A DNA stretch of 64,000 nucleotides, from the NCBI RefSeq assembly GCF_006345805.1, contig NC_043011.1, forward strand, positions 27,540,464-27,604,463, given 5' to 3'. Within the stretch, counting starts at the first letter, position 1; every line of letters begins with the position of its first letter. Shown one piece after another: positions 4,283-47,636 of this stretch. Below the pieces are notes generated by a model that ran no database searches, was not told where the DNA came from, and saw only the letters and a list, made by a program, of their open reading frames with translations. This stretch comes from Octopus sinensis (lineage: Eukaryota). Both the position numbers and the translations under genes were made by a program.

Positions 4283-4751
4283 GTACACACACAAACACAC
4301 ATGCTCTCACACATACATATATGTCTGTTCATTTGTCAATAACATTTGAAAAACTGTTGTGGATTGGAAATTTAATAAAGAAACATTTTTCGTAAAATAT
4401 CATGACCAATATATCTCTTAGTGAATGTCTCATACACTCCGTTCTTATCACCATCTGTACATATAGACCATGACTGCAGGCACACACCAGCTCCCACAAA
4501 ACATGCATATACACATAGGCGTACATATGTGTGTGTATGTATGTTTATGTATGTATGTTTATACATGTATATATATATATATATATGCATAAACCTCTTT
4601 GCGATAAAGTGCCTTTATATTGAGTATAATATGCTATGTAGTCGTATTCTTTTACAGTGTATTTGTCTTATTTGTCTTCTCTAATATAGTCATACATAAA
4701 AGATATATGTGTGTGTGTATGAATGTATGTATATATATATATATATTCATG

Positions 4752-4793
<42 letters not shown>

Positions 4794-4986
4794 CAATACT
4801 AAGCAATTAAGGGTTTAGCAACGAATTGCCTTACCGCACACCGAATTTAGAAATAGCAGTCAAAGAGATTATAGCTATTTCTTCTACTAAAAGGGAGATC
4901 ACAGTAAAGACACAGCATTTGAAAGGCAAACACAAACAGGTAAGAGAGAATGAATTAACGGCAATATATCATACAGTTTTAAGTCA

Positions 4987-5078
4987 CCTACGGACGTACG
5001 TTTCGAGATCAAGTCTTAGGAAAGCATAAGAATTAGATAACTCTACCTTACCCAGACGTCTTCTCTCATCAGCGCAGG
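4987..5078 (-). ncRNA. Type I hammerhead ribozyme, array copy 1
   Basis: Minus strand: CCUGCG-CUGAUGA-GAGA..61-nt stem II..UCUC-GAAA-C-GUAC-GU-C^-CGUAGG. Stem I CCUGCG/CGUAGG; GUC cleavage predicted after 4993. Confidence 0.9.
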
Positions 5079-5566
5079 ATACAAACAATCATGAATGATT
5101 GAATATTGAATTTTGAGATACTAGAAGGCACCAACTCAACTCAGTATCAGAGCGAGGTAGAAGCCACAGCTAGTATCACCAAATTCAAAGTATGAATGAA
5201 AGCTTGTGTCACCAGTCCCTTCCCACCCGCGTGTAGCCAAGACAAGGTGCTGTGGTCATTTACTGGATGAATATGGTATAAGTAACAATGAAGGTGAAAT
5301 TAATTATTTGGAATAATTATCAATTACACCAAGTAGTCTTCGGCATGTGAAAGCCTCATTCGAGGAAAATTTAAGTAATACTAAGCATTAAGGGTTTAGC
5401 AACGAATTGCCTTACCGCACACCGAATTTAGAAATAGCAGTCAAAGAGATATAGCTATTTCTTCTACTAAAAGGGAGATCACAGTAAAGACACAGCATTT
5501 GAAAGGCAAACACAAACAGGTAAGAGAGAATGAATTAACGGCAATATATCATACAGTTTTAAGTCA

Positions 5567-5658
5567 CCTACGGACGTACGTTTCGAGATCAAGTCTTAGG
5601 AAAGCATAAGAATTAGATAACTCTACCTTACCCAGACTTCTTCTCTCATCAGCGCAGG
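5567..5658 (-). ncRNA. Type I hammerhead ribozyme, array copy 2
   Basis: Same fold with intact core; cleavage predicted after 5573. Confidence 0.92.
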
Positions 5659-6149
5659 ATACAAACAATCATGAATGATTGAATATTGAATTTTGAGATA
5701 CTAGAAGGCACCAACTCAACTCAGTATCAGAGCGAGCTAGAAGCCACAGCTAGTATCACCAAATTCAAAGTATGAATGAAAGCTTGTGTCACCAGTCCTT
5801 CCCACCCGCGTGTAGCCACGACAAAGTGCTGTGGTCATTTACTGGGATGAATATGGTTATGAGTAACAATGAAGGGTGAAATTAATTAATTTGGAATAAT
5901 TATCAATTACACCAAGTAGTCTTCGGCATGTAAAAGCCTCATTCGAGGAAAATTTAAGTAATACTAAGCAATTAAGGTTTAGCAACGAATTGCCTTACGC
6001 ACACCGAATTTAGAAATAGCAGTCAAAGAGATTATAGCTATTTCTTCTACTAAAAGGCAGATCACAGTAAAGACACAGCATTTGAAAGGCAAATACAAAC
6101 AGGTAAGAGAGAATGAATTAACGGCAATATGTCATACAGTTTTAAGTCA

Positions 6150-6241
6150 CCTACGGACGTACGTTTCGAGATCAAGTCTTAGGAAAGCATAAGAATTAGA
6201 TAACTCTACCTTACCCAGACTTCTTCTCTCATCAGCGCAGG
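6150..6241 (-). ncRNA. Type I hammerhead ribozyme, array copy 3
   Basis: Same fold with intact core; cleavage predicted after 6156. Confidence 0.92.
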
Positions 6242-6722
6242 ATACAAACAATCATGAATGATTGAATATTGAATTTTGAGATACTAGAAGGCACCAACTC
6301 AACTCAGTATCAGAGCGAGCTAGTATCACCAAATTCAAAGTATGAATAAAAGCTTGTGTCACCAGTCCCTTCCCACCCGTGTGTAGCCAAGACAAAGTGC
6401 TGTGGTCATTTACTGGGATGAATATGGTTATGAGTAACAATGAAGGGTGAAATTAATTAATTTGGAATAATTATCAATTACACCAAGTAGTCTTCGGCAT
6501 GTAAAAGCCTCATTCGAGGAAAATTTAAGTAATACTAAGCAATTAAGGGTTTAGCAACGAATTGCCTTACCGCACACCGAATTTAGAAATAGCAGTCAAA
6601 GAGATTATAGCTATTTCTTCTACTAAAAGGGAGATCACAGTAAAGACACAGCATTTGAAAGGCAAACACAAACAGGTAAGAGAGAATGAATTAACGGCAA
6701 TATATCATACAGTTTTAAGTCA

Positions 6723-6812
6723 CCTACGGACGTACGTTCGAGATCAAGTCTTAGGAAAGCATAAGAATTAGATAACTCTACCTTACCCAGACTTCTTCTC
6801 TCATCAGCGCAG
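6723..6812 (-). ncRNA. Type I hammerhead ribozyme, array copy 4 (core GAAA shortened to GAA)
   Basis: Plus strand reads CGTACGTTCG instead of CGTACGTTTCG, and one stem I base is missing. It is either inactive or a homopolymer sequencing error. Confidence 0.7.
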
Positions 6813-7290
6813 ATACAACAATCATGAATGATTGAATATTGAATTTTGAGATACTAGAAGGCACCAACTCAACTCAGTATCAGAGCGAGCTAGTATCACC
6901 AAATTCAAAGTATGAATAAAAGCTTGTGTCACCAGTCCCTTCCCACCCGCGTGTAGCCAAGACAAAGTGCTGTGGTCATTTACTGGGATGAATATGGTTA
7001 TGAGTAACAATGAAGGGTGAAATTAATTAATTTGGAATAATTATCAATTACACCAAGTAGTCTTCGGCATGTAAAAGCCTCATTCGAGGAAAATTAAGTA
7101 ATACTAAGCAATTAAGGTTTAGCAACGAATTGCCTTACCGCACACCGAATTTAGAAATAGCAGTCAAAGAGATTATAGCTATTTCTTCTACTAAAAGGGA
7201 GATCACAGTAAAGACACAGCATTTGAAAGGCAAACACAAACAGGTAAGAGAGAATGAATTAACGGCAATATATCATACAGTTTTAAGTCA

Positions 7291-7382
7291 CCTACGGACG
7301 TACGTTTCGAGATCAAGTCTTAGGAAAGCATAAGAATTAGATAACTCTACCTTACCCAGACTTCTTCTCTCATCAGCGCAGG
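7291..7382 (-). ncRNA. Type I hammerhead ribozyme, array copy 5
   Basis: Same fold with intact core; cleavage predicted after 7297. Confidence 0.92.
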
Positions 7383-7489
7383 ATACAAACAATCATGAAT
7401 GATTGAATATTGAATTTTGAGATACTAGAAGGCACCAACTCAACTCAGTATCAGAGCGAGCTAGAAGCCACAGCTAGTATCACCAAATT

Positions 7490-7532
<43 letters not shown>

Positions 7533-7939
7533 ATATATACACATACATATGTATATATATATATATTAGCTGCTTTGTTGTATACAGGCAAAGCCACTAC
7601 TAGAAAGAATCATTGAAATGAGTAAATATTGATGCAATGTGGGGCCCTTGTATGACACTTGAGCCCGACGTAAGTTTTGCACATTCTATTACATACTTCA
7701 CGGCTGTGCTGACTAGCAGAAGAAACAGGAGTCACTGTATGAGCTCTTTTGACATGCCTTTTTAATCCTCTAACTGAGAGGCACACCTTTCCACATGTTG
7801 CACATGTTATGTTCTGATGTCAACAATAGCCATATCACAACTCTGATGACTGACCAGGCCTGTACGATTCAATTTCCTCCTACCACAACCCACACACATA
7901 CAGAAAGCAACACTACCTTATTCTCCATAGATTAATTAC

Positions 7940-8305
7940 TTCTAAGCCTTCTACTATTCTCGTGCTTCATTCTCTCTCCTTCAGACCTAGAACAACCACT
8001 TTGCATTCTCTTCCTCCATCCATCTCGGTCTTGTGCCTCTGTATCCCAATCAAACAACTGAAATTCCTGTCTGTGTCAGAGCAATTCTGAGGCAGTCCTT
8101 GAATCTCGTTTTGGGTTTCTGTTCTGGTCTTCCCGCTTACCATACAGAGGTTGCTTGGAGAGTCTTTCATCATTCATTCTTACCAGATGTCCCCCCCACA
8201 CCTCAAAAGACTTGGCAGAATCATTGATTATACACTTCTACTATCATTTTTATCAAGTATCTCTACATCACTGATGGCCATTTTCCAATTCATTCCAAGA
8301 ATTTT
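7940..8305 (-). mobile_element. RTE-clade LINE, 3' end of ORF
   Basis: Minus strand: LRKILGMNWKMAISDVEIL...LLRCGGHLVRMNDERLSKQPLYG, typical of the RTE C-terminus; continues the 9036-11120 fragment. Confidence 0.75.
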
Positions 8306-8335
8306 CCTAAGGCAATATTCCTAAGGCAATATATA

Positions 8336-8397
<62 letters not shown>

Positions 8398-8427
8398 ACA
8401 CACACAAACATATATATATATATATAT

Positions 8428-8786
8428 ATTTGTGAGAATGCTTAGATAACTGCATGACAAGATGGAAGTGAGAGCTAATGTTGGAGGTACCTTGTCAGAT
8501 TCAATTTCTGTAGAAAATGGTTTAAAACAAGGTGATATTCCTACTTCTTAATTTGCTTGTTCTGTATTTTGCAAGGGGTCTATGAAGGTAATAAGACAGT
8601 GAGGAAACTTTTCAACCTCAAAAGACTTTGTGCTAAAACGAAAGTTCTTCATTCTCACATCATTGAGGTCTTGTATGCAGATGATTGTGACCTGCTAGCA
8701 CATTCCCATGATGCAACACATGAAGAATGCGATTTCTGCAGCATGTATAGCAAGGGGCCTAACAATTAACTTGAAAAATAAAACTG
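8428..8786 (+). mobile_element. Inverted duplicate of RTE RT segment 9359-9720
   Basis: Near-identical reverse complement of 9359-9720; encodes LFNLKRLCAKTKV...EVLYADDCDLLAH. Confidence 0.9.
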
Positions 8787-8955
8787 GAGGTACATATATA
8801 TCTTTTATGTATGACTATATTAGAGAAGACAATAAGACAAATACACTGTAAAAGAATACGACTACATAGCATATTATACTCAATATAAAGGCACTTTATC
8901 GCAAAGAGATTTATGCATATATATATATATGCATATATATATATATATAATATAT

Positions 8956-9014
<59 letters not shown>

Positions 9015-9035
9015 TATATTGCCTTAGGCAATATT

Positions 9036-11120
9036 CCTAAGGCATCGTTCCAAATGCCTTACATGCCTACGATAAACAACCTAGGTCTCACTTCCATGTT
9101 GCAAAGATGGCAGCACGCTTATGTTATAAACCCTAACTTTAATTTGGAAAGATATACTATGGCGTGACCAGAAGCACCTGTCAAGCCCACCAAAGGTTTT
9201 ACTAGCCTTGCTGATTCTATATGAAATTTCATCAAGATCAATAGTACTCTAAGTACTTCCTAAATAAATGAATTTAGCTACAACTTCCAACCTTTGAACA
9301 TTCACATTTACAGAAGGTTATGCATAAATCTTAGAAGGGGCAGGATGGTACATTAGAGCAGTTTTATTTTTCAAGTTAATTTTTAAGCCCCTTGCTATAC
9401 ATGCTGCAGAAATCGCATTCTTCATGTGTTGCATCATGGGAATGTGCTAGCAGGTCACAATCATCTGCATACAAGACCTCAATGATGTGAGAATGAAGAA
9501 CTTTCGTTTTAGCACAAAGTCTTTTGAGGTTGAAAAGTTTCCTCACTGTCTTATTACCTTCATAGACCCCTTGCAAAATACTGAGCAAGCAATGTAGAAG
9601 TAGGAATATCACCTTGTTTTAAACCATTATTTTTCTACAGAAATTGAATCTGACAGGGTACCTCCAACATTAGCTCTCACTTCCATCTTGTCATGAAATT
9701 ATCTAAGCATTCTCACAAATTTTTCAGGGCATCCTACCTTTTTCAGGATCTCCCAAAGTACAACTCTATTTACACAATCAAACACTTTAGTCGGATCAAT
9801 AAAAACCTGATATAGGCCCATATCCTGTTCTATGCACTTCTCTTCTAACTATCTAGCTGCAAATATCATATCCATATTACTCATACTACCTCGAAACCCA
9901 CATAGTGTTTCTGGTAGATTCTCATCAGCAATGTGCAGAAGCAATCTATCCAGCATTACCCTATAAAGGACCTTTCCAACGAGAGCAACAGACAAAGGCC
10001 ACGGAAATTGTCACAGACATCCTTTCCATCCTTCGATTTATAGAGTATCTCCATAATCACATCACACCAACCCCAAGGAACCACTTCACTATGCCAATCC
10101 CTCTCAGTCACAACTGTCAACATTGTACAGAGATGTTCACCACCATGTTTGTATATTTCTGCACCTAATCTATCCATACTAGCAGCTTTTCCATTGCTCA
10201 ATTTTCTGATCACTGCATTTATTTCCGCCAGGTTTGGAACCTCTGCTAAAAGATGGTTTGTTGGTCTTTCATGTATATTATCAAGGACAAATAGATCAAC
10301 TCCAGTGGGTCTATTGAGCAACTCATCAAAATGCTCTTTCCATCTCCCAATAATATCTTTAGGATTTTTAAATAATTCTGTGCCATCCTTGCTACGAAGT
10401 GGAGCAGACGTTGATGAAGTTGGACCATAAATTTTTTCAAGAGAGTAAACATCCTTGGAACTGTTAATATTTGAAGCTTCTTGGATTTCATCGCATCTAT
10501 CACTACACCAATTTTCCTGCATCATCCTCAGCTCCCCCTACACTGTTGCTTTCACTGGCTTGAAGCGTGTAGTCACTGTTCTGTTCACTGAAAAGTCAGT
10601 ATCTTGCAACAGGTTGAATGCTTTTAGCATCTCCTCTATAACATAAGACCAATTTCTTCATCATTATCGTGAAACCAATCCAAGTGCTTTGTCTCGACAA
10701 AACCGAGAATGTTACTACAAACCTCATCGACTGTCTCTTTGAACGAATTCCAACTTCCATCACAGGACAAATTATTTATCTCACTCACAAACCCATTGTG
10801 TACTGATGTTGTATTAAGTCTGTTGACATCGATCCGTTTAGGTAACTTATTGTTTGCCCTAAACTTAGGCTTGACAACAAAATTCACATTTGCACGCAAA
10901 AGCTTATACTCCGTCCAGCATTCTGCATCACGCATAACTCGCACAAATAGCAAAGTCCCTGGTATTACGTTTTCTAGTGAAGATATAATCAATAAGGTGC
11001 CATTTCTTAGATCTAGGGGGCATCTACGTCATTTTATACTTATTTTTTAGTTGCAACATTGTGTTCATGACATACAGATCCATCTGTATGTACACATGCT
11101 GATTGAGTATTCAGTATTTG
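9036..11120 (-). mobile_element. RTE (BovB-like) LINE fragment: end of APE, linker and RT
   Basis: WMxPRSKKWHLIDYI-like and RVMRDAECWT.YKLLRA (APE); IYGPTSSTSAPLRSKDG...RWKEHFDELLN; YADD motif (9376-9612); KFIYLGS. Confidence 0.9.
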
Positions 11121-12940: not shown

Positions 12941-13190
12941 ATGGAGGCGCAATGGCCCAGTAGTTAGGGCAGCGGACTCGCGGTCGTAGGATCGTGGTTT
13001 CGATTCCCAGACTGGGCGTTGTGAGTGTTTATTGAGCGAAAACACCCAAAACTCCACGAGGCTCCGGCAGGGGGTGGTGGTGATCCCTGCTGTACTCTTT
13101 CGCCGCAACATTCTCTCACTCTTTCTTCTGTTGGCCTGCTCGCTTAGCCAGCGGGATGGCATCATTTGAAGGCTAAACCAGCGATGTGTA
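12941..13190 (+). mobile_element. tRNA-derived SINE family B
   Basis: TGGAGGCGCAATGGCCCAGTAGTTAGGGCAGCGGACTCGCGG...GGTTTCGATTCCC (A and B boxes). Confidence 0.85.
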
Positions 13191-14442: not shown

Positions 14443-15004
14443 AGCAGCATGGCTCACTCGTTAGAATGTCGGGCTCACAGCCATAAGGTAGTGAGTTCGA
14501 TTCCGGACCGGGCTGGGAATTGTGTTCTTGAGCAGACAATTTATTTCCCGTTGCTCTAGTTCACCTATCTGTAGAAATGAATTGCGACGTCACTGGTACC
14601 AAACTGTATCGGCCTTTGCGTTTCCTCTACGACGGCTTCATTCAATTTCTGTCTGCTGAAATCCACTGACAAGGCTTTGGTCGGCCCGAGGCTATGGTAG
14701 AAAACACTTGCCAAAGGTGCCACGCAGTGGGACTGAGCCCGGGACCATGTCGTTCGTAAGCAAGCTAGTTACCTATTTCTTTATTACCCACAAGGGGCTA
14801 AACATAGAAGGGACAAACATGGACAGACATAGGTATTAAGTCGATTATATCGACCCCAGTGCTTAACTGGTACTTAATTTATCGACCCCGAAAGGATGAA
14901 AGGCAAAGTCGACCTCGGCGGAATTTGAACTCACAACGTAACGGCAGCCGAAATACCGCTAAGCATTTCGCCCGACGTGCTAATGATTCTGCTAGCTCGC
15001 CGCC
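14443..15004. mobile_element. SINE cluster: family C (+, ~14443-14630), family D (-, ~14630-14772), family A (-, ~14772-15004)
   Basis: Matches to fuller copies at 46248, 21178 and 32584 respectively. Confidence 0.75.
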
Positions 15005-15065
15005 TTGTTATCACACAGCCACTCCTACGCCCCAGGTAATATTGAAATAAGTTTTGTAAGCTTTT

Positions 15066-19234: not shown

Positions 19235-20340
19235 TTACAAGTCAAAATAGACTTGTTCATTTTCCAGGACCCGGGTGCCTGTCTATGACATTTATCTACG
19301 CGTACCTGACATGTCACAAATTTGTGGTCCGTGTAAGATACAATAAAAATCGTGGACAGCTAAAGGTAACCCTATCTTTTTCCCTAACAAATACTATGCT
19401 CATGTAAGATCTGCGTGCACCGTCGTTATTACTCCACGTCCACTGTGGAACGCTCAGTTCATCCAGTCTGTAACGGTCTACTAGATTATAGCGCTCTAGT
19501 AAATCCTTGAGGGCAGGATTTCCTTTCCTATCAGTCGAGCCAACACTATCCAACCGTGCATCGAGGATAAAGTCTCCTAAGAGAACTACTATTTTTAACG
19601 TCACTAGAAAGTGCTCCAGGTCTCGTAAAAATGCCAGACTGCCTACACTCGTCAGGAGCGTAGACAGCTACCAACCCGAAGGACTGTTTACTCACGTAGG
19701 TTACATCCAGGACGACCAGACTACTTTCTGTGTTCAGAAAGACAGTACTTACCTACAAGTCCAAGTTCTTCCTGAATAAGACCACCACGCCCCCTGCTCC
19801 ATGTCGGTTATGAGCAATAAATTTCTCGTGGCCATTCAAGAGAGGCGAGAACACTTGTGGTCCACTAATCTTAGACTCAGTTACAATGCACACATCTATA
19901 TCATGTGACCTGAGGTCGTCCAGTAAACAAATTTGTTTCCATTTCGACCCCAGATCACGAACATTCATAGGTAAAAAATGTTTAAGGTGTACTTACAGTT
20001 TAAGTTGGAGGAAGGACTGCACAAATTTGCCTCCCTCCCCATTTTTCTCTTTGCTTGGTGTAGCAGCTTGGCTTTTTCTCGGTGTGGCAGCCGGGCTGAC
20101 AATTAGTTTCCCCTCCGCCACCTCGGGGCTGACGTTTCTTACATCTTCCGGGTATCGAGACTCCAGCTCCGAAAATAATTTCTCTTTCATTTTTACAAGG
20201 AACAAATTTTTCAGCAAAAAGAACCTGTAAAGGATTAAAAAATAACAATTCAAAATCTTTCAATAAAAATTTAACAGAAATTTTCTTATCCCCGTAGGAC
20301 AAAAAATTACCGTTTGTCATGTTGGCATGTTGTCAATGTG
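19235..20340 (-). mobile_element. Tx1/L1-like LINE fragment: end of ORF1 and APE endonuclease
   Basis: MNVRDLGSKWKQ..LLDDLRSHDIDVCIVTESK; VVLLGDF...LVDRYRL...QWTWSN; PGSWKMNKSIL. Confidence 0.85.
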
Positions 20341-23737: not shown

Positions 23738-23970
23738 TGGAGGCGCAATGGCCCAGTGGTTAGGGCAGCGGACTTGAGGTCGGAGGATCGCGGTTTCGAT
23801 TCCCAGACCGGGCGTTGTGTGTGTTTATTGAGTGAAAATACCTAATAGCTCCAGGAGGCTCCGGCATGGGGTGGTGGCGACCCCTGTTGTACTCTTTCGC
23901 CCCTACTTTCTCTCACTCTCTCTTCCTGTTTCTTGAGTGACGCTACGATGGACTGGCGTCCTGTCCAGCA
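23738..23970 (+). mobile_element. SINE family B
   Basis: GGAGGCGCAATGGCCCAGTGGTTAGGGCAGCGGAC...GGTTTCGATTCCC. Confidence 0.85.
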
Positions 23971-24162: not shown

Positions 24163-24247
24163 TATATATTTTATTAATTTGCCTGTACGGCTTATGCTCG
24201 CGGCCACATAACGGTATTATTTTTAGAAATATTATCGTTTTCATATG

Positions 24248-24278
<31 letters not shown>

Positions 24279-24414
24279 TATGTATTTATATGTGTATATA
24301 TATGTATATGCATGTATATATATATGCATATAAATGTATATATATATGATATATATATATGTATATATATGTACGTATATATATATGTGTGTATATATAA
24401 TATATAGTGTATGT

Positions 24415-24448
<34 letters not shown>

Positions 24449-24693
24449 AATATTATATATATATATATATATATACATATATTACAAAATAAGAAAATGG
24501 AGAAACACATCTTAATCAATGATCAACTACCAGATGATACCCAATCACATAACTTATTAAACCAGTATATATGAACATTAAGGTCAAACATAATAATATA
24601 GAACAAAACAATGTACATGAAAGAGTAATATGATACAATAAGTACAGTATGTATAAGTGAATATAAATAAATACAAATATAAATATAAACTAC

Positions 24694-24820
24694 ATCTTAC
24701 AGCTGTTTCGGCCATGCAGATATGTGTGTCTCATTATGCTCATATTATCCATGTGTGATAGGTCAATATGTAGTTATAAATGAGACACTTACAAAAATAT
24801 CCCTAGGCCTCTTCAGAGAT
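24694..24820 (-). ncRNA. Type I hammerhead ribozyme with 100-nt stem II
   Basis: AUCU-CUGAAGA-GGCC..(GAUAU/AUAUC, GUGUCUCAUU/AAUGAGACAC)..GGCC-GAAA-C-AGCU-GU-A^-AGAU. Confidence 0.85.
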
Positions 24821-24935
24821 TATGAAATACAAACTAAATTAAATATGAATATCAGAGGAGGTACGCCCATACAAGAGTGGGTATATACCAATGATATATA
24901 ATATACACATATATATGAGTGCATATACCCATACT

Positions 24936-24974
<39 letters not shown>

Positions 24975-26872
24975 TATGCATAATAATAATATAAATCAAT
25001 ATACATACATATGTTCTATATTCAATGTTACAGTTGGTCAACATAATATTATGATATTACAATGTAGAAAACATACACATATTCATATTCAAATGCAGAT
25101 ATACAAAGTCAAGAGTACATTATATTAAGTTACAAAATGTCATTAATATTAACATTATTACTATTATCATTACCACTATTGCTACTAATATCATTATTAT
25201 TATTATTAATAACATTAATACCAGCAAAACATTATATGCATCACACGGTTAGCAACATGATAGCAAAAACAACAACAACAATTATACTACAGTACCATGC
25301 AAAGCATTAACGATCGGCATATATATATAAAATGAAAAATAAAAACATTGGTTTACATGATATTAAGTTCCACAAGTGTATAAATGTACATGCGAGTGCA
25401 TTCCATAATTTCGACTATGACACATATACAGTATTATGTTCAGAAATAGTTAAGAATCGAACGCTAAATATGATTGGCCTGTACATTTAAATTTCAATTG
25501 TCTTCTTTACGGTTGGTTTGTTAAGAAACACACACACGCACACATGCAAACGTGCGCCCACATACACATAGATGGACAAACCACAACACAGGAGATACCA
25601 GCCTCCCCCCACACATGTTTACATACAAATCTACTCGCATATATCCATAAAAATAGCCAAGGTTGTGAGGAGTTTTCAGGACATTTATAATGAAATAGTT
25701 TTACACCTGTTTCTGGGATGTTATGGATATCATTTTGTCAGAGACAGTGTGAGAAAATATTTGAGTTGGAATTATTGTGGAAAAGGAGGAGATACGGAAT
25801 GTAGAGGGAAATAAGAGAATGAAAGTAGAAATAAGATATATAAAGATATTGTAGTTGCAGTTCCATTATTCGAGGAAAATGATGTAAAGAAGTGGTAAAA
25901 ACTTTCTTGTACATGTCATTTTAAAGTATGGAGCCAGGGAGTCAGTGCGGCTCGTTCGAAAGGGTGCTGTGGTGTGAATCAAACTTTGAGAATGTATTGG
26001 TAGTATTTGTAGATAGATGGTAGGAGGATAGATGCATATGATTAGAAAAAGGAGATAGGTCAAAATGAAAACAGGAAGACAAAATGAGAGGAAGAAAGAG
26101 AGAAAAAGAAAAAAGAAAAAAGGGTGAAAGATGTGAGAAAAGGAATGTTAGTTAGTAGTTAAGGTAATGTAATGGGAGAATGGGAGGGGTGTGGGGGAGG
26201 GAAAGGAAGATATGAGAAGGTAAGGAGTAAAAGAATGTGAGATATATGAGTAGGGGTGATATGATAGCTCTGTCATATATTTCTATTCTTGATTGTTCGT
26301 GTTCGTGTATCTGTGTGTATGTGTGTTTGTATGTGTGTTTTCTAAGGCTTGTGTGCATGTATCCATGTATTATGTGCGTATTTGTACAGATATTCATGTT
26401 AAAGTATACGTCATACATAAGGAATAATCTGATTGTGTACATATTACACATTAAATATAGGGAGAGACAGATGGGTAGACTGATCGATAGATATTCAGTT
26501 AGTAAAATCGATAGACAGATAGATAGATTCATAGATAAATAGATAGATTGACTGATTTCTTCATTGACAGATAGATAGATTCAAAATAGTTAGGTAGGGT
26601 GAAGGATTCAGAAGAGAACCCAGAAAGATTGGAGAATGTGAGAACTTAAATAAAACTTATAAACATTTGGGCATATAGTATTTACGTATGTATATATATA
26701 TATATATATATATATCCGAATGTAAGACTATTTGTGTATCTGTGAATGTCTCTGTGTGTACTAACCATACAATCGCAAACATACTCACAAACACGTGCAC
26801 ACAAACACATATGCATAAGAGCGCGTGTGTATGTATTATATATAAATATATTCGCATTTACATACACGCATA

Positions 26873-32583: not shown

Positions 32584-32806
32584 GATTGCAGAAACGTTAG
32601 CGCGCCGGGCGAAATGCTTTCCAGTATTTCGTCTGCAGTTACGTTCTGAGTTCAAATTCCGCCGAGGTCGACATTGCCTTTCATCCTTTCGGGGTCGATG
32701 AAATAAGTACCAGTTACGCACTGGGGTCGATGTAATCGTCTTAATCCGTTTGTCTGTCCTTGTTTGTCCCCTCTGTGTTTAGCCCCTTGTGGGTAGTAAA
32801 GAAATA
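32584..32806 (+). mobile_element. 5'-truncated SINE family A with 17-bp target-site duplication
   Basis: GGTGCATGTTAACCAGT at 32567-32583 and 32807-32823. Confidence 0.9.
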
Positions 32807-33339
32807 GGTGCATGTTAACCAGTTAAAGGACTTACTTTTTAGCAGTGGAAAGCAGAAAGCCTAGGTGCCACATAAATTGTACCAGCAATCACTAAAGGGT
32901 TATTTGTGTCATAATCTGCATAATATTTCACAACGAGATTATGCATGCCTCTAATTTTGCAACACATTTTGGCATGAGACTCTTTGTATTATATGATGGG
33001 CAGTTCTAACCAATAAAGAAAAGATTCTACTTCGTTTCCTTACAATAGACGAAGCAGCTACAACTGGTGCATGTTTTATCATGACATAAAGAATAGAAGA
33101 CAACGGTTTAAACACTACTGTATTACAGATGAAGTATACAGCGGATGTAATTACATAGGCAAATGTTTTTTGACCGGCGACTTGAAAATTCTGCTATCTA
33201 CAGCACTGCTCATGCTGTTGCTGTTGCTGTTGAGAGAACGGTCTTCGTCCCAGAGCTCGCAAGATGGGAGAAGTCCGAAATGTGGTCCTTTGCTATTCGT
33301 AAAACCCGTAGAAGAGAAAGCAGGTTAACCCCCCCCCCC

Positions 33340-34050
33340 CCCCACCACCGACACCGAGAGCATCGACGGATGGATGAATGCGCATTCAGGCTCAGCAGTT
33401 GCGTAGGAAGTCGGGGACAAGAAACAGGAAGAAAGCGTGAGAGAAAGTTGGGGCGGAAGAGAACAACACGGGTCGCCACCACCCCCTGCCGGAGCCTCGT
33501 GGAGCTTTAGGTGTTTTCACTCAATAAACACACACAACGCCCGGTCTGGGAATCGAGACCGCGAGTCCGCTGCCCTAACCACTGGACCATTGTTGTTGCT
33601 GCTGCTGCTGATGAAACAACTGGTTATAATACTAATATTAATAATATCTTAAACTTCTGTACAAGGCCAGTAATTGTAGAAGAAGAGATTTAGTCGATTG
33701 CATCGACTCCATTTTTAAACTGGTGCTTATTTTATCGACTCATAAAGGACAAAAGATAGTGTCGACCTCGGAGCAATTTGAACTCAGAGGAAATGCCATT
33801 AAGCATATTGACCTATGTGCTTATGATTCTAGGAGCTCGACTCCTTAGAAATAATATTAATCATTTCTACTGTAGGTACAAGGCCTGTAATTTTGTGGAA
33901 GGGTCAAGTCATTTACATCTACCCATGTGTTCAATTGATACTTATTACATAGTCTCTGAAGGGAGGAAAGGCAAAATCGATATCGGCAAAATTTGAATCC
34001 AAAACGTAAGGCCGCAAGAAATGCCAATGTGCATTTTGTTTGGTGTACTA
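33340..34050 (-). mobile_element. SINE cluster: family B (~33340-33588) and two decayed family A copies
   Basis: Reverse complements of the family heads and bodies. Confidence 0.7.
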
Positions 34051-36539: not shown

Positions 36540-37665
36540 TTTTTCTATCCTTCCTTAATACCAGTTCCCATATGCTAGTCATATCTGCACTCGGTCTGCT
36601 TAGGAGGCTGTTGTGTCCTAGCATACGTGCTGCTTCTTTTAATGTTCGTATTTTCCAGTGGTGTTCTCTGTCTATTATTTTAACTTCATCCCACAGGGTG
36701 AGGTGGTCTCCATTTTTTCATACATGATCAGTTATATCCGATTTATCTATATCTCCTCGTGTCACAGCTTTGCGATATTCGTCTACCCTTATTTTGAGAG
36801 GGCGGCATGTTTCGCCTTTGTATAACCTACCACAGCTGCATGGCATGGAGTACACGCAGTCTTTGGTCATATTCTCTTCTATTGGTGGTTTTGCTCGAAG
36901 GAGATATTTGCGAAGTGTTTTATTAGTCTTGAATACTGTTCTGATGCCATATGGGCCGCATATCTTTTGTATCGTTTCGGAGAGGCCTTTGTGGACAGTT
37001 TATTGACTTGATCTCTTTTCTTCATAATTGGAGTGGGTAGTACGTTTTGGGGGTAGTTGTTGCTTATTAGATTGTTATTGAGCTTGATCATTTCTTCGTG
37101 GTGTGCATCACGATCGCTACTTATATTCTTTGCACGATGTTTTAGGCACTCAGCAATCCATCTTTTTACACTGTATGGATAGTGGAAATTGAACTTGAGG
37201 TATCGTCCAGTAAAGGTCGGCTTGCAGTATACGGATGTCCTGAATCCATACTTGGTGCGTGTTATTAATACATCCAGGAATGCTAGTTGATTGTATTTTT
37301 CCTTTTCCACTGTGAACTGTATGTATGGCTTTATTGCGTTCACATGATCTAACAGCACTTGGACATCTTCCTGGTGGGGCCAGAGTATAAAGGTGTCATC
37401 AACATATCGCAGCCATAGGATTGGTTTTAGTGGTGTTGATCCTAAAACCAAATTCTCAAAGTATTCCATGTATATATTGACTATTATCGGTGATAATGGC
37501 GATCCCATATCTAAAGTCACTTCTTGCCGATATATATATATCAGCATCCATACTGAAGTTGGTAGATTCTATACAGAATTTCAACATTTCCATCAAGTTT
37601 CTTATTGGTATACTAGTGCGTTCTTTTAGATGGGTGTCTGTCATTAGTTTATCTTGAATCACCGA
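36540..37665 (-). mobile_element. Penelope-like element: RT and decayed GIY-YIG region, 5'-truncated
   Basis: MGSPLSPIIVNIYMEYFE, LRYVDDTF, QFTVEKE, LAFLDVLI and YCKPTFTGRYL in ORF 36879-37547. Confidence 0.9.
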
Positions 37666-37764
37666 TAGTGCCGAAACGTGACAAATATCCGTCAAATGTA
37701 AATAATGTACATAATTCCTCTTCTCTTAAATATAGAACTGTAATTTTCAGATATATTAATCGTT

Positions 37765-37963: not shown

Positions 37964-38030
<67 letters not shown>

Positions 38031-40709: not shown

Positions 40710-40774
40710 ATTAATTAAATATTATTTTACAGAATAATAAAATTAAAATTTCTTTGACTAAAACCCTTTCTAAC

Positions 40775-41118
40775 ATGGAAGTATCCAAAGAGCATTTGAG
40801 GTACATAATGCTTTATGTGTACAAAAAAGGAAACTCTGCAGCCGAAGCGACTCGAAACATGCACTCAGTTTATGGGAAAGAATGTTTGAATGAAAGAATT
40901 TGCAGAAGACGGTTTGCAAAAATCAGAAGTGGAGATTTCAACCTTGAAGATGAAGATCGATCAGGACGTGCAGTTGAGTTTGAAGATAAGCTCCTAGAGG
41001 CATTACTTGAAGAAAATCCTGCATCATCAGTTGAAGAATTGGCAATAAAGCTTACTTCAAATCATACAACTGTTAATCGTCATTTTCAACAACTTGGAAA
41101 GGTTCCTAAACTTGGAAA
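40775..41118 (+). pseudogene. Mariner transposase N-terminal HTH fragment
   Basis: MEVSKEHLRYIMLY..KKGNSAAEATRN...GDFNLEDEDRSGR..EF...LLEENP...ELA.KL...HTTV.RH..QLGKV.KLGK. Confidence 0.9.
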
Positions 41119-41129
41119 ATTTAGATTTA

Positions 41130-41670
41130 AATAAGAAAATTTACAAACGCTATAGAACACCCAACCATTGACTTGGCTATATTAATGTAGGTTCCTGCCA
41201 TCCTCCCATTATGTTTAAGAATTTAGCTAAAAACGTTAGCAAAATAATTTCTAGACTCTCCTCCGATATAAACATCTCTAATAGTATTGCCCTAATACAT
41301 AATAAAGCTCTAAAAAATGGTGGTTTTAGCGAGGAAATAACCTATAGAGCTGTTATTAGTGCAGAAATAAAGAGGAAGAAGAATGGGAACAGGAAGATTA
41401 TCTGGTTCACAACACCTTACTTCCCCGAAGTGACCTTTAGTAGAGGTAGATGTTTTTATTACTTATAGATAGGCATTTTCCAATCAATAATTATTATAGG
41501 AGGCTCGTTAATAGACATAATATAAAAATTAGTTTTAGTTCTATTAATAACTTTAAAAATATAATTGCACACAATACACAAAAACAACAAAATGAAGTCG
41601 GTTATTCCTGCACAGTTAAAAATTTGTGTCCGCTAAATGGAGCTTGTATGACCGAGGCCATAGTTTATGA
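41130..41670 (+). mobile_element. Penelope-like (Neptune-type) fragment, RT-EN linker
   Basis: YINVGSCHPP, RKIIWF.TPY, IDRHFP...NRHNIKISFSS...KNII and C.VKNLCPLNGACMTEAIVY. Confidence 0.75.
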
Positions 41671-42720
41671 ATGTGTGTGTACGTGTGTGTGCGTGGACTT
41701 GTGTGTGGGGCTGTCTTGGAGCAGATGTGCGTTACTCTGTGTGCATGTGTGGGTGTATGTGCGTGTGTGTGTATGTGTGTGCGTGTGAGCGTGTGTACAT
41801 GTGTTTCTGTATGTGGATGTGTGTACGTGTGTGCGTGGGGTTGTGAGTATTAGGTATGTGAGCATTCGTGTGTATGTGTGCTCATGTGTGTGAGTGAGTG
41901 TGTGGATATGTGTGTATGAGTGTGTGCGTGTGTGTATGTATGTGTGCATGTATGTATATATTATGTGAGCGTGTGTGTGCGTGTATGTGTATGTATGTGT
42001 GTGCATGTGTGCGCGTGCGTGTGTGTGTGTGCCTGCGTGTGTATTTGTGTATATGTGTGTGTGCGTCTGTGTATGTATGTGTGTGCGTATATGTATATAT
42101 TGCGTGTGTGTGTATGTGTATGTATATGTGCGTATATTTGTGTGTATGTGTGAGTTTCTTTATGCGTGTGTGCGTGGAGCTGTGTGGGGAGTTGTGTGGA
42201 GGTATATGTTGTTCCTGTGTGTGCGTGTGCTTACATGCGTGTGTACTTATGTTTATGTGTGTATAATTGTGTGCGTGTATGTGTGTGTGTTGTGTGTGTA
42301 GGACGTATGTGTGTGTACATGTGCGAGTGTGTGTATGTATCTGTGTGTATATGTGTGTGTGTGTGTATGTGCATGTATTTATGTGTGTGCACGTGCGTGT
42401 GTATGAGCGTATGTGCATGTGTGTGCCTTGTGTGTGCGTGTTGTGTGTGTGGTGTGTGAGGGAGGTGTATCTGCATGGATGTGTGTGCGCGTAGGTGTAT
42501 GAGTGTGTATATAGGCATGTGTGTATGCGCGTGTATACGCATGTGTACGTGTGTATATGCGTGTGTGTATGTGTGTATGTGTGTATGTAATTTGTGTGTA
42601 TGTGCATGTATGTGTGTTGTATGTGTGTTGGAGGTATATGTGCGTTCACGTGTGTGCACGGGTGCGTGTATTTTTTCGTGTGTGTATATGCCCGTGTATG
42701 TGTATATGTGTGCGTGTATA
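41670..42720. repeat. ~1 kb degenerate (TG/TA/TGCG) low-complexity tract
   Basis: Directly visible; source of many spurious ORFs. Confidence 0.9.
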
Positions 42721-42789
42721 TGGAAATAAAATAAAATGTAATGAATTATAATAAAAAAGGTTGATAGGGGATAAAGAAGTTAATATAAA

Positions 42790-43870
42790 ATGGCGCAATA
42801 AAAAACAAAAATGTAATAAAGTGCTTTCTTGCAGGAGGTTGTAGAGACAGTCATTTGGAGGAGGGGGTTGTGTTTTGTCCGAAGAGCATAGTTGTTCCAG
42901 GCGGATTCGCGAGTGTGCGGATCCGTGATGCGGAGTGAGGCCAAAGACGGAGATGTTAGAGGGGGAGTGGTTGACTAAGCGGAAGTGACGGGCAACAGGG
43001 ATGTTCGAACGCAGCCGAAAACCCCTTAGATGTTCGGTGAACCGGTCAGCCAATCAGCGATCCGTTTGATCTACATATAGATTACCGCAGAGGTTGCATC
43101 TAATATAGTATATGAGGCTAGAAGAGGTGCAAGAGAAAGAATTTCTGATGTGAAGAATATGCTGGTTGGAACCAGGTAGTGTTGGTGATGAAGGGACAGG
43201 TGTGGCAGCGGGATCAGGAACACAGGAAGGATCCAGGTGGGGCTGGGGGGAAAAGGAGAAGATGCTACGGACCAGTAGATCGCGTAAGTTCCCGGCGCTT
43301 TTAAAGGAGGACATGGGTGGGCTGGGAAAAATGGAACGGGTGGTGGAATCGAGCTGGAGACGACGGAAGGCCCGTAGGATGCTCCGACGAAGGGGTAGGG
43401 TTGAGGGGTGGAAAAGGAGGAGAAAGTGGGTGCAGTTAGGGGATTTGTATGGGGGAGGAGAGAGGGTGGTGGTGCCATGGATTCGACGAGCGCGTGCACG
43501 TGCGGTTTGGACAAAGGTTGAAGGGTATACTCGATGCATGAATAGGCGGTCAAGGAGGTATTGGGACTGGGTCTTGAAATCCTGGTCCCGGCTGCACAAG
43601 CATCGGAGGCGGAGGAACTGTGAGTAGAGGATGGCCCGTTTGGTGTGGAAGGGATGGGAGAAGTTGAGGTAGCGGTGGGAATCTGTGGGTTTGAAGAAGG
43701 CGGAGGTGGTGAGAGAGTGGGAGGGGAGGTCAATGCTAAGAGAGATATCAAGGAAGTTAACCGAGATGTTAGAGATGGTAGAAATAAATTGGAGAGAGGG
43801 GTGGAAGTTAGAAAGGAAAGAAATGAAGTGGGAGAGTTGTTGACGGGAGAGGGAGTTGGCACCTATACAG
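42790..43870 (-). mobile_element. Penelope-like element fragment: RT thumb and GIY-YIG endonuclease
   Basis: NFHPSLQF...VNFLDISL...FKPTDSH.YL; FSCTSSSLIYYIRCNLCGNLYV.QT.R.LADRFTEHLR; PVARHF. Confidence 0.85.
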
Positions 43871-46699: not shown

Positions 46700-46930
46700 C
46701 TATTCGAAACTGTTCCCTACCTTGGCGTTCCAATCTCCCACCAAGATAATGACATCTCTCCGTAGAGCATTGCCCAGTGTCTGCTGAACAACATCATAGA
46801 AATCCTGAATTTCTTCTTCACTAGCTTCACTCGTTGGTGCGTAAACCTGGATGAGTGTAGTGTTTAGAGGGTGACCCCTCAGCCGTATGGTGACGATTCT
46901 GTCATTTACATTGTCTCTGAGATCGGCGAG
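46700..46930 (-). mobile_element. RTE LINE APE endonuclease fragment
   Basis: NDRIVTIRLRGHPLNTTLIQVYAPTSEASEEEIQDFY...IILVGDWNAKVG. Confidence 0.85.
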
Positions 46931-47204
46931 CGGCCTTATTCTTTGTATGTAGCAGCAATGCATAAAGATCACAATGTATCCTCAATGTTAGATAACCAAC
47001 TGTAAGGCAACTAAATAACACAGATGGTTGCGTGCAATCGTGTAAAAGATTAGGCACATTACCCGAGTGCAAGTACAGCATATCTAACGAGCTTCCGCAC
47101 AAATTCTAACATGTATTGAATGTTTATGAAGCTATGGCGTGATTGACTTGTGCAATGTATTGCATCAAATTATGAGGTCAAACCTAGAACCACGTGTATG
47201 TATG

Positions 47205-47628
47205 TATCTATCTTATGTTTTATTGCCCACAAGGAGCTACACACAGAGGGGACAAACAAGGACAGACAAACGGACTGAGTCGATTACATCGACCCCAGTA
47301 CATAACTGATACTTATTCAATCCACCCCGAAAGAATGAAAGGCAAAGTCGACCTCGGCAGAATTTAAACTGTGAACGTAGTGGCAGACGAAATACCTATT
47401 TCTTTACCTACCACGAGGGGCTAATCACACAGGGGACAAACAAGGACAGACACACGGAATAAGTCGATTACATCAACCCCAATGCGTAACTGGTACTTAA
47501 TTTATCGACTCTGAAAGGATGAAAGGCAAAGTCGACCTCGGCGGAATTAGAATTCAGAACGTAACGGCAGACGAAATACTGCTACGCATTTCGCCCGGCG
47601 TGCTAACGTTTCTGCCAGCTCGCCGCCT
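47205..47628 (-). mobile_element. Tandem SINE family A copies
   Basis: Reverse-complement family A body repeated, joined at GAAATAGGTATTTCGTCTGCC. Confidence 0.8.
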
Positions 47629-47636
47629 TATGTATG

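What the first reader, a model, noticed from the sequence alone, without database searches (positions are those of the whole stretch)
4795..7493. Tandem array of hammerhead-ribozyme units: candidate retrozyme producing ~570-580 nt self-cleaved, possibly circular, RNAs
Seen: ~4.7 near-identical non-coding units, each with a type I hammerhead fold on the minus strand (intact core in four of five). Stem I is CCUGCG/CGUAGG, the core is CUGAUGA...GAAA, stem II is a 61-nt hairpin, stem III has 2 bp closing a palindromic GUAC loop, and the site is GUC. Predicted cuts after 7297, 6729, 6156, 5573 and 4993 give monomers of 568, 573, 583 and 580 nt. Established: type I hammerheads with short palindromic stem III occur in Penelope-like pseudo-LTRs and metazoan non-LTR retrozymes, cleave as dimers in tandem transcripts, and can yield circular RNAs. 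Inference: this is a non-autonomous ribozyme retroelement amplified through a multimeric RNA or cDNA intermediate and inserted into (TA)n, probably using a Penelope RT in trans. Whether this family is already described cannot be checked here.
Basis: partly seen in the sequence, partly recalled or inferred. Interest (0 to 1): 0.92.

Follow-up and report, generated by a model that had tools for sequence, protein, structure and literature searches.

The report
Hammerhead-ribozyme tandem repeat (animal retrozyme)
This is a real 2.7-kb array of about 4.7 non-coding ~575-nt repeats, each carrying a self-cleaving hammerhead ribozyme motif; it belongs to the already described class of animal "retrozymes", so it is a well-formed new example, probably from an octopus-like genome, and not a new kind of element.

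Summary
Window 4790-7493 holds 4.7 head-to-tail units (568/573/583/580 nt, 98-99% identical at aligned bases). Each has a type I hammerhead on the minus strand, with predicted cuts after 7297, 6729, 6156, 5573 and 4993. Four motifs have a complete core. The fifth differs only by 1-nt deletions in homopolymer runs, which may be assembly errors.

Rfam models do not detect the motif, but a descriptor scan finds it, with 0 hits in 30 shuffled windows. The unconstrained fold of a natural two-unit transcript is a textbook double hammerhead. The ribozyme strand folds with z = -6.0; its complement reaches z = -1.8.

The array lies between (TA)n tracts, a documented target of Penelope-like elements (PLEs). 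Two degraded PLE copies lie in the same window, and so does a second, unrelated solo hammerhead element, also between (TA)n tracts. The host is probably an octopod cephalopod.

This fits the known class of metazoan non-LTR retrozymes. Unusual points are the large unit and a 61-nt helix II. No relatives of the unit could be found. Copy number, cleavage, circular RNA and the mobilising enzyme therefore remain inferred. Verdict: new member of a known kind, modest interest.

The parts
4790..7493 (-). Whole tandem array, 4.7 units of ~575 nt. The sense (ribozyme-bearing) strand is the minus strand.
   Evidence: TRF gives period 583, 4.7 copies, 96% matches. BLAST of one unit hits only this region of the window. 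Unit spacings.
7297..7493 (-). 5' partial unit (unit positions ~387-583), ending at the first predicted cut site.
   Evidence: 197 nt, identical to the tail of monomer 3.
7291..7382 (-). Hammerhead 1, complete core, predicted cut after C at 7297.
6729..7296 (-). Monomer 1 (568 nt). Lacks the 13-nt CTGTGGCTTCTAG segment.
6723..6812 (-). Hammerhead 2, defective as assembled (GAA for GAAA, stem I CUGCG for CCUGCG). Nominal cut after 6729.
   Evidence: The differences are 1-nt deletions in homopolymer runs.
6156..6728 (-). Monomer 2 (573 nt). Lacks the 13-nt segment.
6150..6241 (-). Hammerhead 3, complete core, cut after 6156.
5573..6155 (-). Monomer 3 (583 nt), used as the reference unit for folding.
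   Evidence: MFE -170.2 kcal/mol, z = -6.04.
5567..5658 (-). Hammerhead 4, complete core, cut after 5573.
4993..5572 (-). Monomer 4 (580 nt).
4987..5078 (-). Hammerhead 5, complete core (one A-to-C change inside helix II), cut after 4993.
4795..4992 (-). 3' partial unit (unit positions 1 to ~198-204). The array ends about 200 nt after the last cut site.
7493..7566 (.). (AT)n tract bounding the array on its 5' side (minus sense). Presumed half of the split target microsatellite.
4726..4791 (.). (TA)n tract bounding the array on its 3' side (minus sense). Presumed other half of the target.

Best explanation
The array is a non-autonomous, non-coding ribozyme retroelement of the metazoan 'non-LTR retrozyme' class, probably in an octopod cephalopod genome.

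Proposed mechanism. Transcription of the minus strand gives a multimeric RNA. Adjacent hammerheads, one unit (~575 nt) apart, are brought together by the compact fold of the intervening body. They pair through the 8-nt palindrome ACGUACGU into a double hammerhead, with a shared 8-bp helix III and swapped stems I. [quoted passage not shown] In the monomer, stem I holds the two ends side by side, so a host RtcB-type ligase can close them into a circle. Multimeric or circular RNA is then copied by the reverse transcriptase and GIY-YIG endonuclease of a Penelope-like element, which nicks (TA)n or AT-rich DNA. This yields a new tandem array inside a (TA)n microsatellite.

Shown here: the array, the complete hammerhead cores, the type I topology, the dimer-favouring fold, the strand-specific RNA structure, the (TA)n flanks, and PLE copies in the same window.

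Inferred from published work on relatives: transcription, cleavage, circularisation, and the identity of the mobilising enzyme.
For: Array and motif coordinates.

All conserved positions are present in 4 of 5 copies: C3 U4 G5 A6 U7 G8 A9, G10.1-C11.1, G12 A13 A14, A15.1-U16.1, C17. Helix I is open, which is the type I topology. The scan gives 0 hits in 30 shuffled windows.

The geometry is helix I 6 bp, helix II 4 bp before an internal loop, and helix III 2 bp plus a palindromic tetraloop. This matches the published description of canonical metazoan type I hammerheads that act as dimers (PMC4209133).

Two 92-nt motifs cofold into a double hammerhead at -66.0 kcal/mol, against 2 x -28.9 for monomers. 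The single-motif MFE sequesters part of the core, and the canonical monomer fold is 3.2 kcal/mol less stable than that MFE. The unconstrained MFE of the natural 703-nt two-hammerhead transcript pairs the two palindromes, 583 nt apart, with both cores open.

The sense-strand unit folds to -170.2 kcal/mol, z = -6.04, with 0 of 100 shuffles as stable. The complement gives -127.2, z = -1.82. The circular fold has z = -5.2 to -6.5 for all four monomers.

The unit has no coding capacity.

(TA)n lies on both sides, while perfect (TA)>=10 tracts cover only 2.1% of the window. A second, unrelated hammerhead element at 24485-24940 is also bounded by (TA)n on both sides. (TA)n and AT-rich DNA are documented PLE targets (PMC8557442; PMC11167929).

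PLE fragments with an RT YVDD motif and a GIY-YIG-like motif (read by eye) lie at 36721-37568 and 42649-43893. Only the first was searched; it has more than 1000 homologues carrying RVT_1 + PF26215.

The class is documented: circRNA, RtcB ligation and the PLE link in PMC7229834 and bioRxiv 10.64898/2026.07.22.740005.
Against: Rfam covariance models give no hammerhead match at gathering score, nor at E <= 10. The likely cause is the 61-nt helix II, but this was not tested.

No homologue of the unit was found anywhere, so there is no covariation support and no evidence of other genomic copies or of mobility.

The unit shows no sequence similarity to the PLE fragments in the window or to a related PLE locus. 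Those PLE copies are truncated and frameshifted, so no active partner is shown.

No target-site duplication can be read in (TA)n.

In the one PLE studied biochemically, hammerhead cleavage was not needed for insertion (PMC11167929). In Xenopus, only 1 of 9 predicted retrozyme dimers cleaved in vitro. Predicted activity is therefore not guaranteed.

Two adjacent units share a 13-nt deletion. This is not what a fresh rolling-circle copy of one monomer circle would give.
Confidence: 0.8

Rival explanations
1. Same element, different copying route. The array was made by PLE-type target-primed reverse transcription of an unprocessed multimeric transcript, started at a fixed internal site about 200 nt 3' of a hammerhead. 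Ribozyme cleavage and circular RNA are then dispensable for integration.
For: In the Anolis Poseidon element, RT starts at an internal site ~85-92 nt 3' of the hammerhead cut, on unprocessed RNA, after nicking AT-rich DNA. Catalytic hammerhead mutants still insert (PMC11167929).

Here the array ends 198 nt after its last cut site, and the unrelated solo element ends 213 nt after its own, both at (TA)n.

The units are heterogeneous: the 13-nt indel follows the pattern with/without/without/with/with. That fits copying of a heterogeneous multimer better than rolling-circle copying of one circle.
Against: There are only two elements, so similar end positions may be coincidence. The distance differs from the ~90 nt seen in Anolis. 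The heterogeneity could equally arise after insertion through unequal exchange or slippage between the CTAGCT direct repeats, and some of it may be assembly error.
Confidence: 0.35
2. An ordinary satellite. A single hammerhead-bearing PLE tail or pLTR fragment landed in (TA)n and was expanded in place by unequal crossing-over or replication slippage. The ribozyme is then a passenger with no present role, and no RNA-mediated amplification occurred.
For: Only one locus is visible and no relatives were found. Neighbouring units share variants, with m1 close to m2 and m3 close to m4, as local exchange would give. Li et al. 2026 propose local amplification of PLE termini as the origin of such arrays.
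Against: The whole 583-nt unit, not only the ribozyme, has strongly strand-specific RNA structure, z = -6.0 against -1.8 for the complement. The tandem transcript folds into an intact double hammerhead. Both features point to selection at the RNA level. The array starts and ends at different unit positions directly against (TA)n.
Confidence: 0.15
3. Assembly artefact: a collapsed or mis-expanded repeat produced by a long-read assembler, so the copy number and the inter-unit differences are unreliable.
For: All ten 1-nt indels between units sit in homopolymer runs, the usual signature of residual long-read error.
Against: Units also differ by substitutions and by a 13-nt indel in a structured pattern, which artefactual duplication would not create. 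The junctions with unique flanks are clean. An error in copy number would not remove the element itself.
Confidence: 0.04

Closest known systems
Metazoan non-LTR retrozymes (Cervera & de la Pena 2020, PMC7229834; Li, Clavereau & Pollet 2026, bioRxiv 10.64898/2026.07.22.740005), e.g. Mytilus galloprovincialis ~350-390 bp and Acropora millepora 220-240 bp repeats
   Same: Head-to-tail non-coding repeats, each with one type I hammerhead in one polarity. GC below 50%. No LTR. The predicted monomer RNA is highly self-paired with the ribozyme free to fold. PLEs occur in the same genome. The array meets the 'at least 2 consecutive complete hammerheads' criterion.
   Different: The ~575-nt unit is above the 150-450 nt range reported for invertebrates in 2020, although it lies inside the 51-972 bp range reported in 2026. 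Helix II is a 61-nt hairpin, where the usual form is 4 bp plus a small loop. No cephalopod example was found in the searchable literature. Expression and circularity were not tested.
Amphibian satellite hammerheads / axolotl HHR_Amex2 retrozymes (PMC7229834)
   Same: Helix III of 2 bp capped by a tetraloop. Weak as a monomer and efficient as a dimer in tandem transcripts.
   Different: Unrelated sequence. The amphibian units are 330-350 nt and have a short helix II with conserved loop 1 / loop 2 contacts. Here 'loop 2' is an internal loop leading into a long arm.
pDo500 satellite of Dolichopoda cave crickets (PMC2837043, PMC2808323)
   Same: A large (~500 bp) tandem satellite unit carrying a hammerhead ribozyme. 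This shows that units of this size are not unprecedented.
   Different: Insect family with unrelated sequence. I did not compare the ribozyme architecture in detail.
Minimal hammerheads in the pseudo-LTRs of Penelope-like elements (Cervera & de la Pena 2014, PMC4209133)
   Same: Type I topology. Palindromic helix III that implies action as a dimer. Association with PLE biology and with AT-rich or (TA)n targets.
   Different: PLE min-HHRs lack a canonical helix III, or have only a very small one (as in Drosophila, rotifers, shrimps and mosquitos). They have a 4-5 bp helix I and a 6-8 bp helix II, and they flank an RT/GIY-YIG ORF. Here helix I is 6 bp, helix III is 2 bp plus a tetraloop, there is no ORF between repeats, and no similarity to the window's PLE fragments was found.
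Plant LTR retrozymes (Cervera et al. 2016, PMC4918200)
   Same: Non-autonomous and non-coding, giving a 600-1000 nt circular RNA after double hammerhead cleavage. The size range is similar.
   Different: Plant elements have type III hammerheads inside two LTRs, a PBS and PPT, and 4-bp TSDs, and are mobilised by Gypsy elements. None of these applies here.

Membership tests
Hammerhead ribozyme, type I | Conserved core: C3 U4 G5 A6 N7 G8 A9, G12 A13 A14, A15.1-U16.1, H17 not G | tested here: met
   Present in the copies at 7297, 6156, 5573 and 4993. The copy at 6729 lacks one A of GAAA as assembled.
Hammerhead ribozyme, type I | Three helices around the core, with helix I the open one and a G10.1-C11.1 pair | tested here: met
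   Helix I 6 bp, helix II 4 bp + internal loop + extended hairpin, helix III 2 bp + GUAC.
Hammerhead ribozyme, type I | Match to the curated Rfam hammerhead covariance models | tested here: not met
   No hammerhead hit at gathering score over the whole window, nor at E <= 10 on 4500-7800. The 61-nt helix II insertion is the likely reason, but this was not tested.
Hammerhead ribozyme, type I | Compensatory base changes in the helices across homologues | not testable with these tools
   No homologues were retrievable. The five copies are nearly identical.
Hammerhead ribozyme, type I | Site-specific self-cleavage | not testable with these tools
   Needs in vitro transcription. Only thermodynamic support for a double hammerhead is available.
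Metazoan non-LTR retrozyme | Tandem head-to-tail repeats with a type I hammerhead in each unit, at least two consecutive complete motifs | tested here: met
   Three consecutive complete motifs at 6156, 5573 and 4993, plus one at 7297.
Metazoan non-LTR retrozyme | Non-coding, GC below 50%, no LTRs | tested here: met
   ORFs of at most 69 aa with no true homologues. Unit GC is 37.7%. The end pieces are no more alike than internal units, so there is no LTR-like terminal redundancy. PBS and PPT motifs were not searched for.
Metazoan non-LTR retrozyme | Unit length in the reported range | tested here: met
   568-583 nt. This is outside the 150-450 nt of PMC7229834 but inside the 51-972 bp of the 2026 preprint.
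Metazoan non-LTR retrozyme | Monomer RNA predicted to be stable and highly self-paired | tested here: met
   z = -6.04 for the linear fold and -5.2 to -6.5 for the circular fold, with 63-66% of bases paired.
Metazoan non-LTR retrozyme | Dispersed multiple copies in the genome (evidence of mobility) | not testable with these tools
   Only one array in the 64-kb window. The source genome is not in the accessible collections.
Metazoan non-LTR retrozyme | Expression as linear and circular unit-length RNA | not testable with these tools
   No transcriptome data are available here.
Metazoan non-LTR retrozyme | Co-occurrence with PLEs in the same genome | tested here: met
   PLE fragments at 36721-37568 and 42649-43893.
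PLE pseudo-LTR derivative | Sequence similarity of the unit to the terminal repeat of a PLE in the same genome | tested here: inconclusive
   No similarity to anything else in the window or to locus L001. However, the window's PLE copies are truncated and have no recognisable pLTR, and no full-length PLE from this genome was available.
Autonomous PLE | RT plus GIY-YIG ORF between the hammerhead-bearing repeats | tested here: not met
   The units are contiguous and non-coding.
Viroid-like / HDV-like autonomous circular RNA replicon | Ribozymes in both polarities, or a replicase or antigen ORF | tested here: not met
   The hammerhead occurs on the minus strand only. No other Rfam ribozyme is found on either strand. 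There is no ORF.

The most novel reading that the evidence does not exclude
This may be the first cephalopod retrozyme family. Its hammerhead would keep the canonical 6-bp/4-bp helix I/II geometry but replace loop 2 with an internal loop that leads into a ~45-nt arm, possibly a handle for the mobilising protein. Its genomic copies would all end at a fixed site ~200 nt 3' of the ribozyme inside (TA)n. That would show that animal retrozymes integrate by PLE-type internal initiation on uncleaved multimers, and not by rolling-circle copying of circles.
Probability: 0.2. Interest if true: 0.5.

Novelty: new member of a known kind. Interest (0 to 1): 0.3.

Why it matters
The locus is a clean natural example of a double-hammerhead retrozyme at the large end of the size range. 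It probably extends the class to cephalopods.

With the source genome in hand, this family could help settle an open question about animal retrozymes: are new arrays copied from circular RNA by rolling-circle reverse transcription, or from unprocessed multimers by PLE-type internal initiation? The two models predict scattered and fixed 3' ends respectively.

The long helix II also shows that curated covariance models can miss real hammerheads. That matters for genome annotation. Beyond these points it adds one example to a known class and no new principle.

Tried and rejected
1. Rfam search at gathering score and at E <= 10 gave no hammerhead hit, only AT-rich miRNA-like noise in the flanking microsatellites. 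I did not take this as evidence against the motif, because descriptor scans are the standard method in this field and the 61-nt helix II is a poor fit to the models.

2. Searches for relatives of the unit all failed. The + strand ORF in the 5.8-billion-protein index gave nothing. The sense-strand ORF by exhaustive phmmer gave three hits, two bacterial repeat adhesins and one low-complexity repeat protein, all spurious. A core-plus-palindrome DNA pattern gave two matches in JGI metagenomes, neither forming stems I/II, and none in IMG/VR.

3. Exact look-ups of two window ORFs, meant to find the source assembly, found nothing on record.

4. I tested for a higher-order repeat or LTR-like terminal redundancy, prompted by the 99% identity of the first and last 400 nt. 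I rejected it: the end pieces are no closer to each other than to internal units.

5. An alternative cleavage register (GUA, 4 nt upstream, helix III 1 bp + 2-nt loop, stem I only 3 bp) appeared in the relaxed scan. I rejected it as clearly weaker than the GUC register.

6. A weak + strand candidate at 60019 and a relaxed hit at 54560 are AT-rich single motifs without repeat context. I treat them as chance.

7. A PLE-related locus, L001, from an unidentified ENA assembly carries no hammerhead by my scanner and has no similarity to the unit. It gives no help in linking the ribozyme type to a PLE clade.

8. No tRNA-like sequence was found that could explain the SINE-like repeats.
Full report
OBSERVATION. 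Read on the minus strand, window 4790-7493 is a head-to-tail array. It consists of a 197-nt partial unit, four full units and a ~198-nt partial unit. TRF with a long maximum period reports period 583, 4.7 copies, 96% matches and 2% indels. The default TRF run missed it because its period limit is 500. The pattern CTGATGAG-N(45-70)-CGAAACGTACGTC occurs four times on the minus strand and in none of 100 shuffles. The predicted cleavage-site cytosines are at + coordinates 7297, 6729, 6156, 5573 and 4993, which gives monomers of 568, 573, 583 and 580 nt.

VARIATION BETWEEN UNITS. The units are 97.9-99.1% identical at aligned bases. They differ mainly by one 13-nt indel lying between CTAGCT direct repeats and by ten single-base indels. 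All ten single-base indels lie in homopolymer runs. That pattern is typical of residual long-read error. The copy at 6729 looks defective because it has GAA for GAAA, CUGCG for CCUGCG and TT for TTT. Those changes are all 1-nt deletions in homopolymer runs, so the copy may be intact in the animal.

IS IT A HAMMERHEAD? Each intact motif reads 5'-CCUGCG / CUGAUGA / 61-nt hairpin opening with G and closing with C / GAA / A-C-GUAC-G-U / C^ / CGUAGG-3'. Every conserved core position is present, the G10.1-C11.1 pair is present, and the open helix is helix I, so the topology is type I. An RNAMotif-style scanner I wrote finds exactly the four intact motifs in the array. It finds none in 30 shuffles of the whole window on both strands.

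Against this, Rfam's covariance models give no hammerhead match, either at gathering score on the whole window or at E <= 10 on the region. The 61-nt helix II, in place of the usual 4 bp and a small loop, is the likely cause, but I could not test a trimmed version. The membership row 'matches Rfam model' is therefore recorded as not met, and the descriptor definition as met.

The geometry is helix I 6 bp, helix II 4 bp up to an internal loop, and helix III 2 bp with a palindromic tetraloop. This is what Cervera and de la Pena describe for canonical metazoan type I hammerheads that act as dimers (PMC4209133).

HOW IT SHOULD WORK. A single 92-nt motif prefers a fold in which part of the core is paired (-28.9 kcal/mol). 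The canonical monomer fold is less stable, at -25.7. Two motifs cofold at -66.0 into a textbook double hammerhead: ACGUACGU pairs with its twin to form an 8-bp helix III, and both cores stay open.

More tellingly, I folded the natural 703-nt transcript that spans two consecutive hammerheads, with no constraints. Its MFE structure (-210.1 kcal/mol) pairs the two palindromes 583 nt apart, swaps the two stems I as a double hammerhead requires, keeps both stems II, and leaves both cores unpaired. The ~480-nt body between them folds as a closed multi-branched domain, and this closure is what brings neighbouring ribozymes together.

The structure is specific to the ribozyme strand. The sense unit folds to -170.2 kcal/mol, z = -6.04, with 0 of 100 shuffles as stable and a centroid close to the MFE. 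The complement gives -127.2, z = -1.82. Circular folds of all four monomers have z = -5.2 to -6.5. In the released monomer, stem I holds the 5' and 3' ends side by side, which is the arrangement needed for ligation.

These results are thermodynamic predictions. Cleavage and circularisation are inferred from experiments on other retrozymes, which showed dimer-dependent cleavage, RtcB ligation and abundant circRNA (PMC7229834).

CONTEXT. The unit occurs nowhere else in the window. It is non-coding: its ORFs are at most 69 aa and have no true homologues. No ribozyme is found on the + strand.

The array is bounded directly by (TA)n on both sides, at 4730-4791 and 7493-7566. Perfect (TA)>=10 tracts cover only 2.1% of the window.

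The scan also found a second, unrelated hammerhead-like motif on the minus strand, with a predicted cut after 24698. It has the same unusual design: CUGAAGA, a ~96-nt helix II, and helix III of 2 bp plus a palindromic AGCU loop, so ACAGCUGU is again an 8-nt palindrome. It lies in a solo ~456-nt insert that is also flanked on both sides by (TA)n. Two independent hammerhead elements both sitting in (TA)n argues for targeted integration. (TA)n and AT-rich DNA are the documented targets of PLE endonucleases (PMC8557442; PMC11167929).

The window also holds two degraded PLE copies on the minus strand. The first, at 36721-37568, has RVT_1 with a YVDD motif, followed in another frame by CVYSMPCSCGRLYKGETCRPLKIRVDEYRKA, which I read by eye as a GIY-YIG-like motif; Pfam gave no hit for that stretch. 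The second, at 42649-43893, also has no Pfam hit and is called a PLE from motifs read by eye. The first copy has more than 1000 homologues carrying RVT_1 and PF26215. Both copies are truncated or frameshifted, so no active partner is shown, and their clade was not determined.

Immediately 5' of the array, on the same strand, is the decayed 3' end of a LINE (7610-11028). Its only named relatives are Octopus bimaculoides proteins at 72% and 79% identity. Together with ~36% GC and 9.6% simple repeats, this suggests an octopod cephalopod host. This is an inference from two TE-derived proteins, not an identification.

MECHANISM OF SPREAD AND RIVALS. The published model for animal retrozymes is as follows. 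A multimeric RNA self-cleaves, the monomers are ligated into circles, and an RT, probably from a PLE, copies the circle into tandem cDNA (PMC7229834). The 2026 preprint adds that these elements derive from PLE terminal repeats.

A concrete alternative comes from the Anolis Poseidon element. There the protein nicks AT-rich DNA and starts reverse transcription at an internal site ~85-92 nt 3' of the hammerhead cut, on unprocessed RNA. Ribozyme mutants still insert.

Here the array ends 198 nt after its last cut site and the solo element ends 213 nt after its own. The 13-nt indel follows the pattern with/without/without/with/with along the array, which a fresh rolling-circle copy of one circle would not give. 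Both facts lean weakly toward copying of a heterogeneous multimer or toward later local exchange. With one array and one solo element, they cannot decide the matter.

Pure in-place satellite expansion remains possible, at about 0.15. It does not explain the strand-specific structure of the whole unit. An assembly artefact is unlikely, because the units differ in a structured way.

COMPARISON AND NOVELTY. The locus meets every defining feature of a metazoan non-LTR retrozyme that can be tested in sequence. It has tandem type I hammerheads, with three consecutive complete motifs. It is non-coding, GC is 37.7%, and it has no LTR-like ends. The monomer is strongly self-paired, and PLEs occur in the same genome. 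Dispersed copies, expression and circularity could not be tested.

It differs from the 2020 invertebrate examples in unit size (~575 nt against 150-450) and in its long helix II. However, unit lengths of 51-972 bp are now reported, and the ~500-bp pDo500 cricket satellite is an older precedent. I found no paper on cephalopod retrozymes in the searchable library. That is absence of evidence in a limited library, not proof of novelty.

I therefore rate it a new member of a known kind, with interest about 0.3. Its interest score of 0.92 is not.

LIMITS. No homologue of the unit could be retrieved by any route. As a result there is no covariation test, no copy-number estimate, no empty-site comparison and no link to a specific PLE.

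Noticed in passing
window 24485-24940 (minus strand); predicted cut after 24698: A second, unrelated hammerhead-like element present as a solo ~456-nt insert. It reads AUCU/CUGAAGA/~96-nt helix II/GAAA/C-AGCU-G-U/A^AGAU, so ACAGCUGU is an 8-nt palindrome, and two copies cofold through that palindrome. (TA)n lies on both sides (24243-24482 and 24938-24977). It has no sequence similarity to the array unit. It is probably a monomer of another retrozyme or PLE-tail family with the same target preference.
   Followed up: partly
window 36721-37725 (minus strand): Degraded Penelope-like element. It has RT with YVDD (Pfam RVT_1, E = 1e-9), then in another frame a motif I read by eye as GIY-YIG-like (CVYSMPCSCGRLYKGETCRPLKIRVDEYRKA; no Pfam hit). 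It is frameshifted in the RT, and its 5' side abuts (AT)n at 37967-38029. It has more than 1000 homologues with RVT_1 + PF26215, the best at 65-72% identity. No hammerhead was detected next to it.
   Followed up: partly
window 42649-43893 (minus strand): Second PLE-like fragment, called from motifs read by eye (RYIDN..., LIYYIRCNLCGNLYVDQTDR, LADRFTEHLR as a GIY-YIG-like motif). It is embedded in a G/T-rich stretch with (TG)n and (GTGT)n, where GC skew reaches +0.55. Pfam gives no hit, and the clade was not determined.
   Followed up: no
window 7610-11028 (minus strand); 8428-8786 versus 9359-9720; 4536-4712 versus 8792-8966: Decayed LINE directly 5' of the array on the same strand, with a C2H2-like tail, a YADD RT motif and an N-terminal region. 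Its closest named relatives are Octopus bimaculoides proteins (72-79% identity). The LINE is rearranged: a 360-bp RT piece is duplicated in inverted orientation (96% identity), and a 177-bp segment next to the array's left (TA)n tract recurs inverted at 8792-8966 (92% identity).
   Followed up: partly
window 12942-13132, 23738-23930, 33423-33592, 51232-51423, 57242-57434: Five copies, in both orientations, of a ~190-bp interspersed repeat (83-92% identity), probably a SINE. ARAGORN finds no tRNA-like fold in the window.
   Followed up: partly
window 14770-15006, 32588-32809, 47219-47629, 2698-2865: Another short interspersed repeat family (78-90% identity), including a 184-bp x 1.8 tandem at 47242-47579.
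   Followed up: no
window 40715-41131 (+ strand): N-terminal HTH_48 domain of a Mos1/mariner-type transposase (Pfam E = 3e-18). Only a fragment is present.
   Followed up: no
whole window: Very high simple-repeat load. 9.6% of the bases lie in repeats of period <= 6, mostly (TA)n (43 perfect tracts of at least 10 units), with (TATC)n, (TG)n and (ATAC)n. No evident host exon was seen. LINE endonuclease or RT remnants lie at 1-504, 19317-19667, 46703-46981 and 53560-53934.
   Followed up: no
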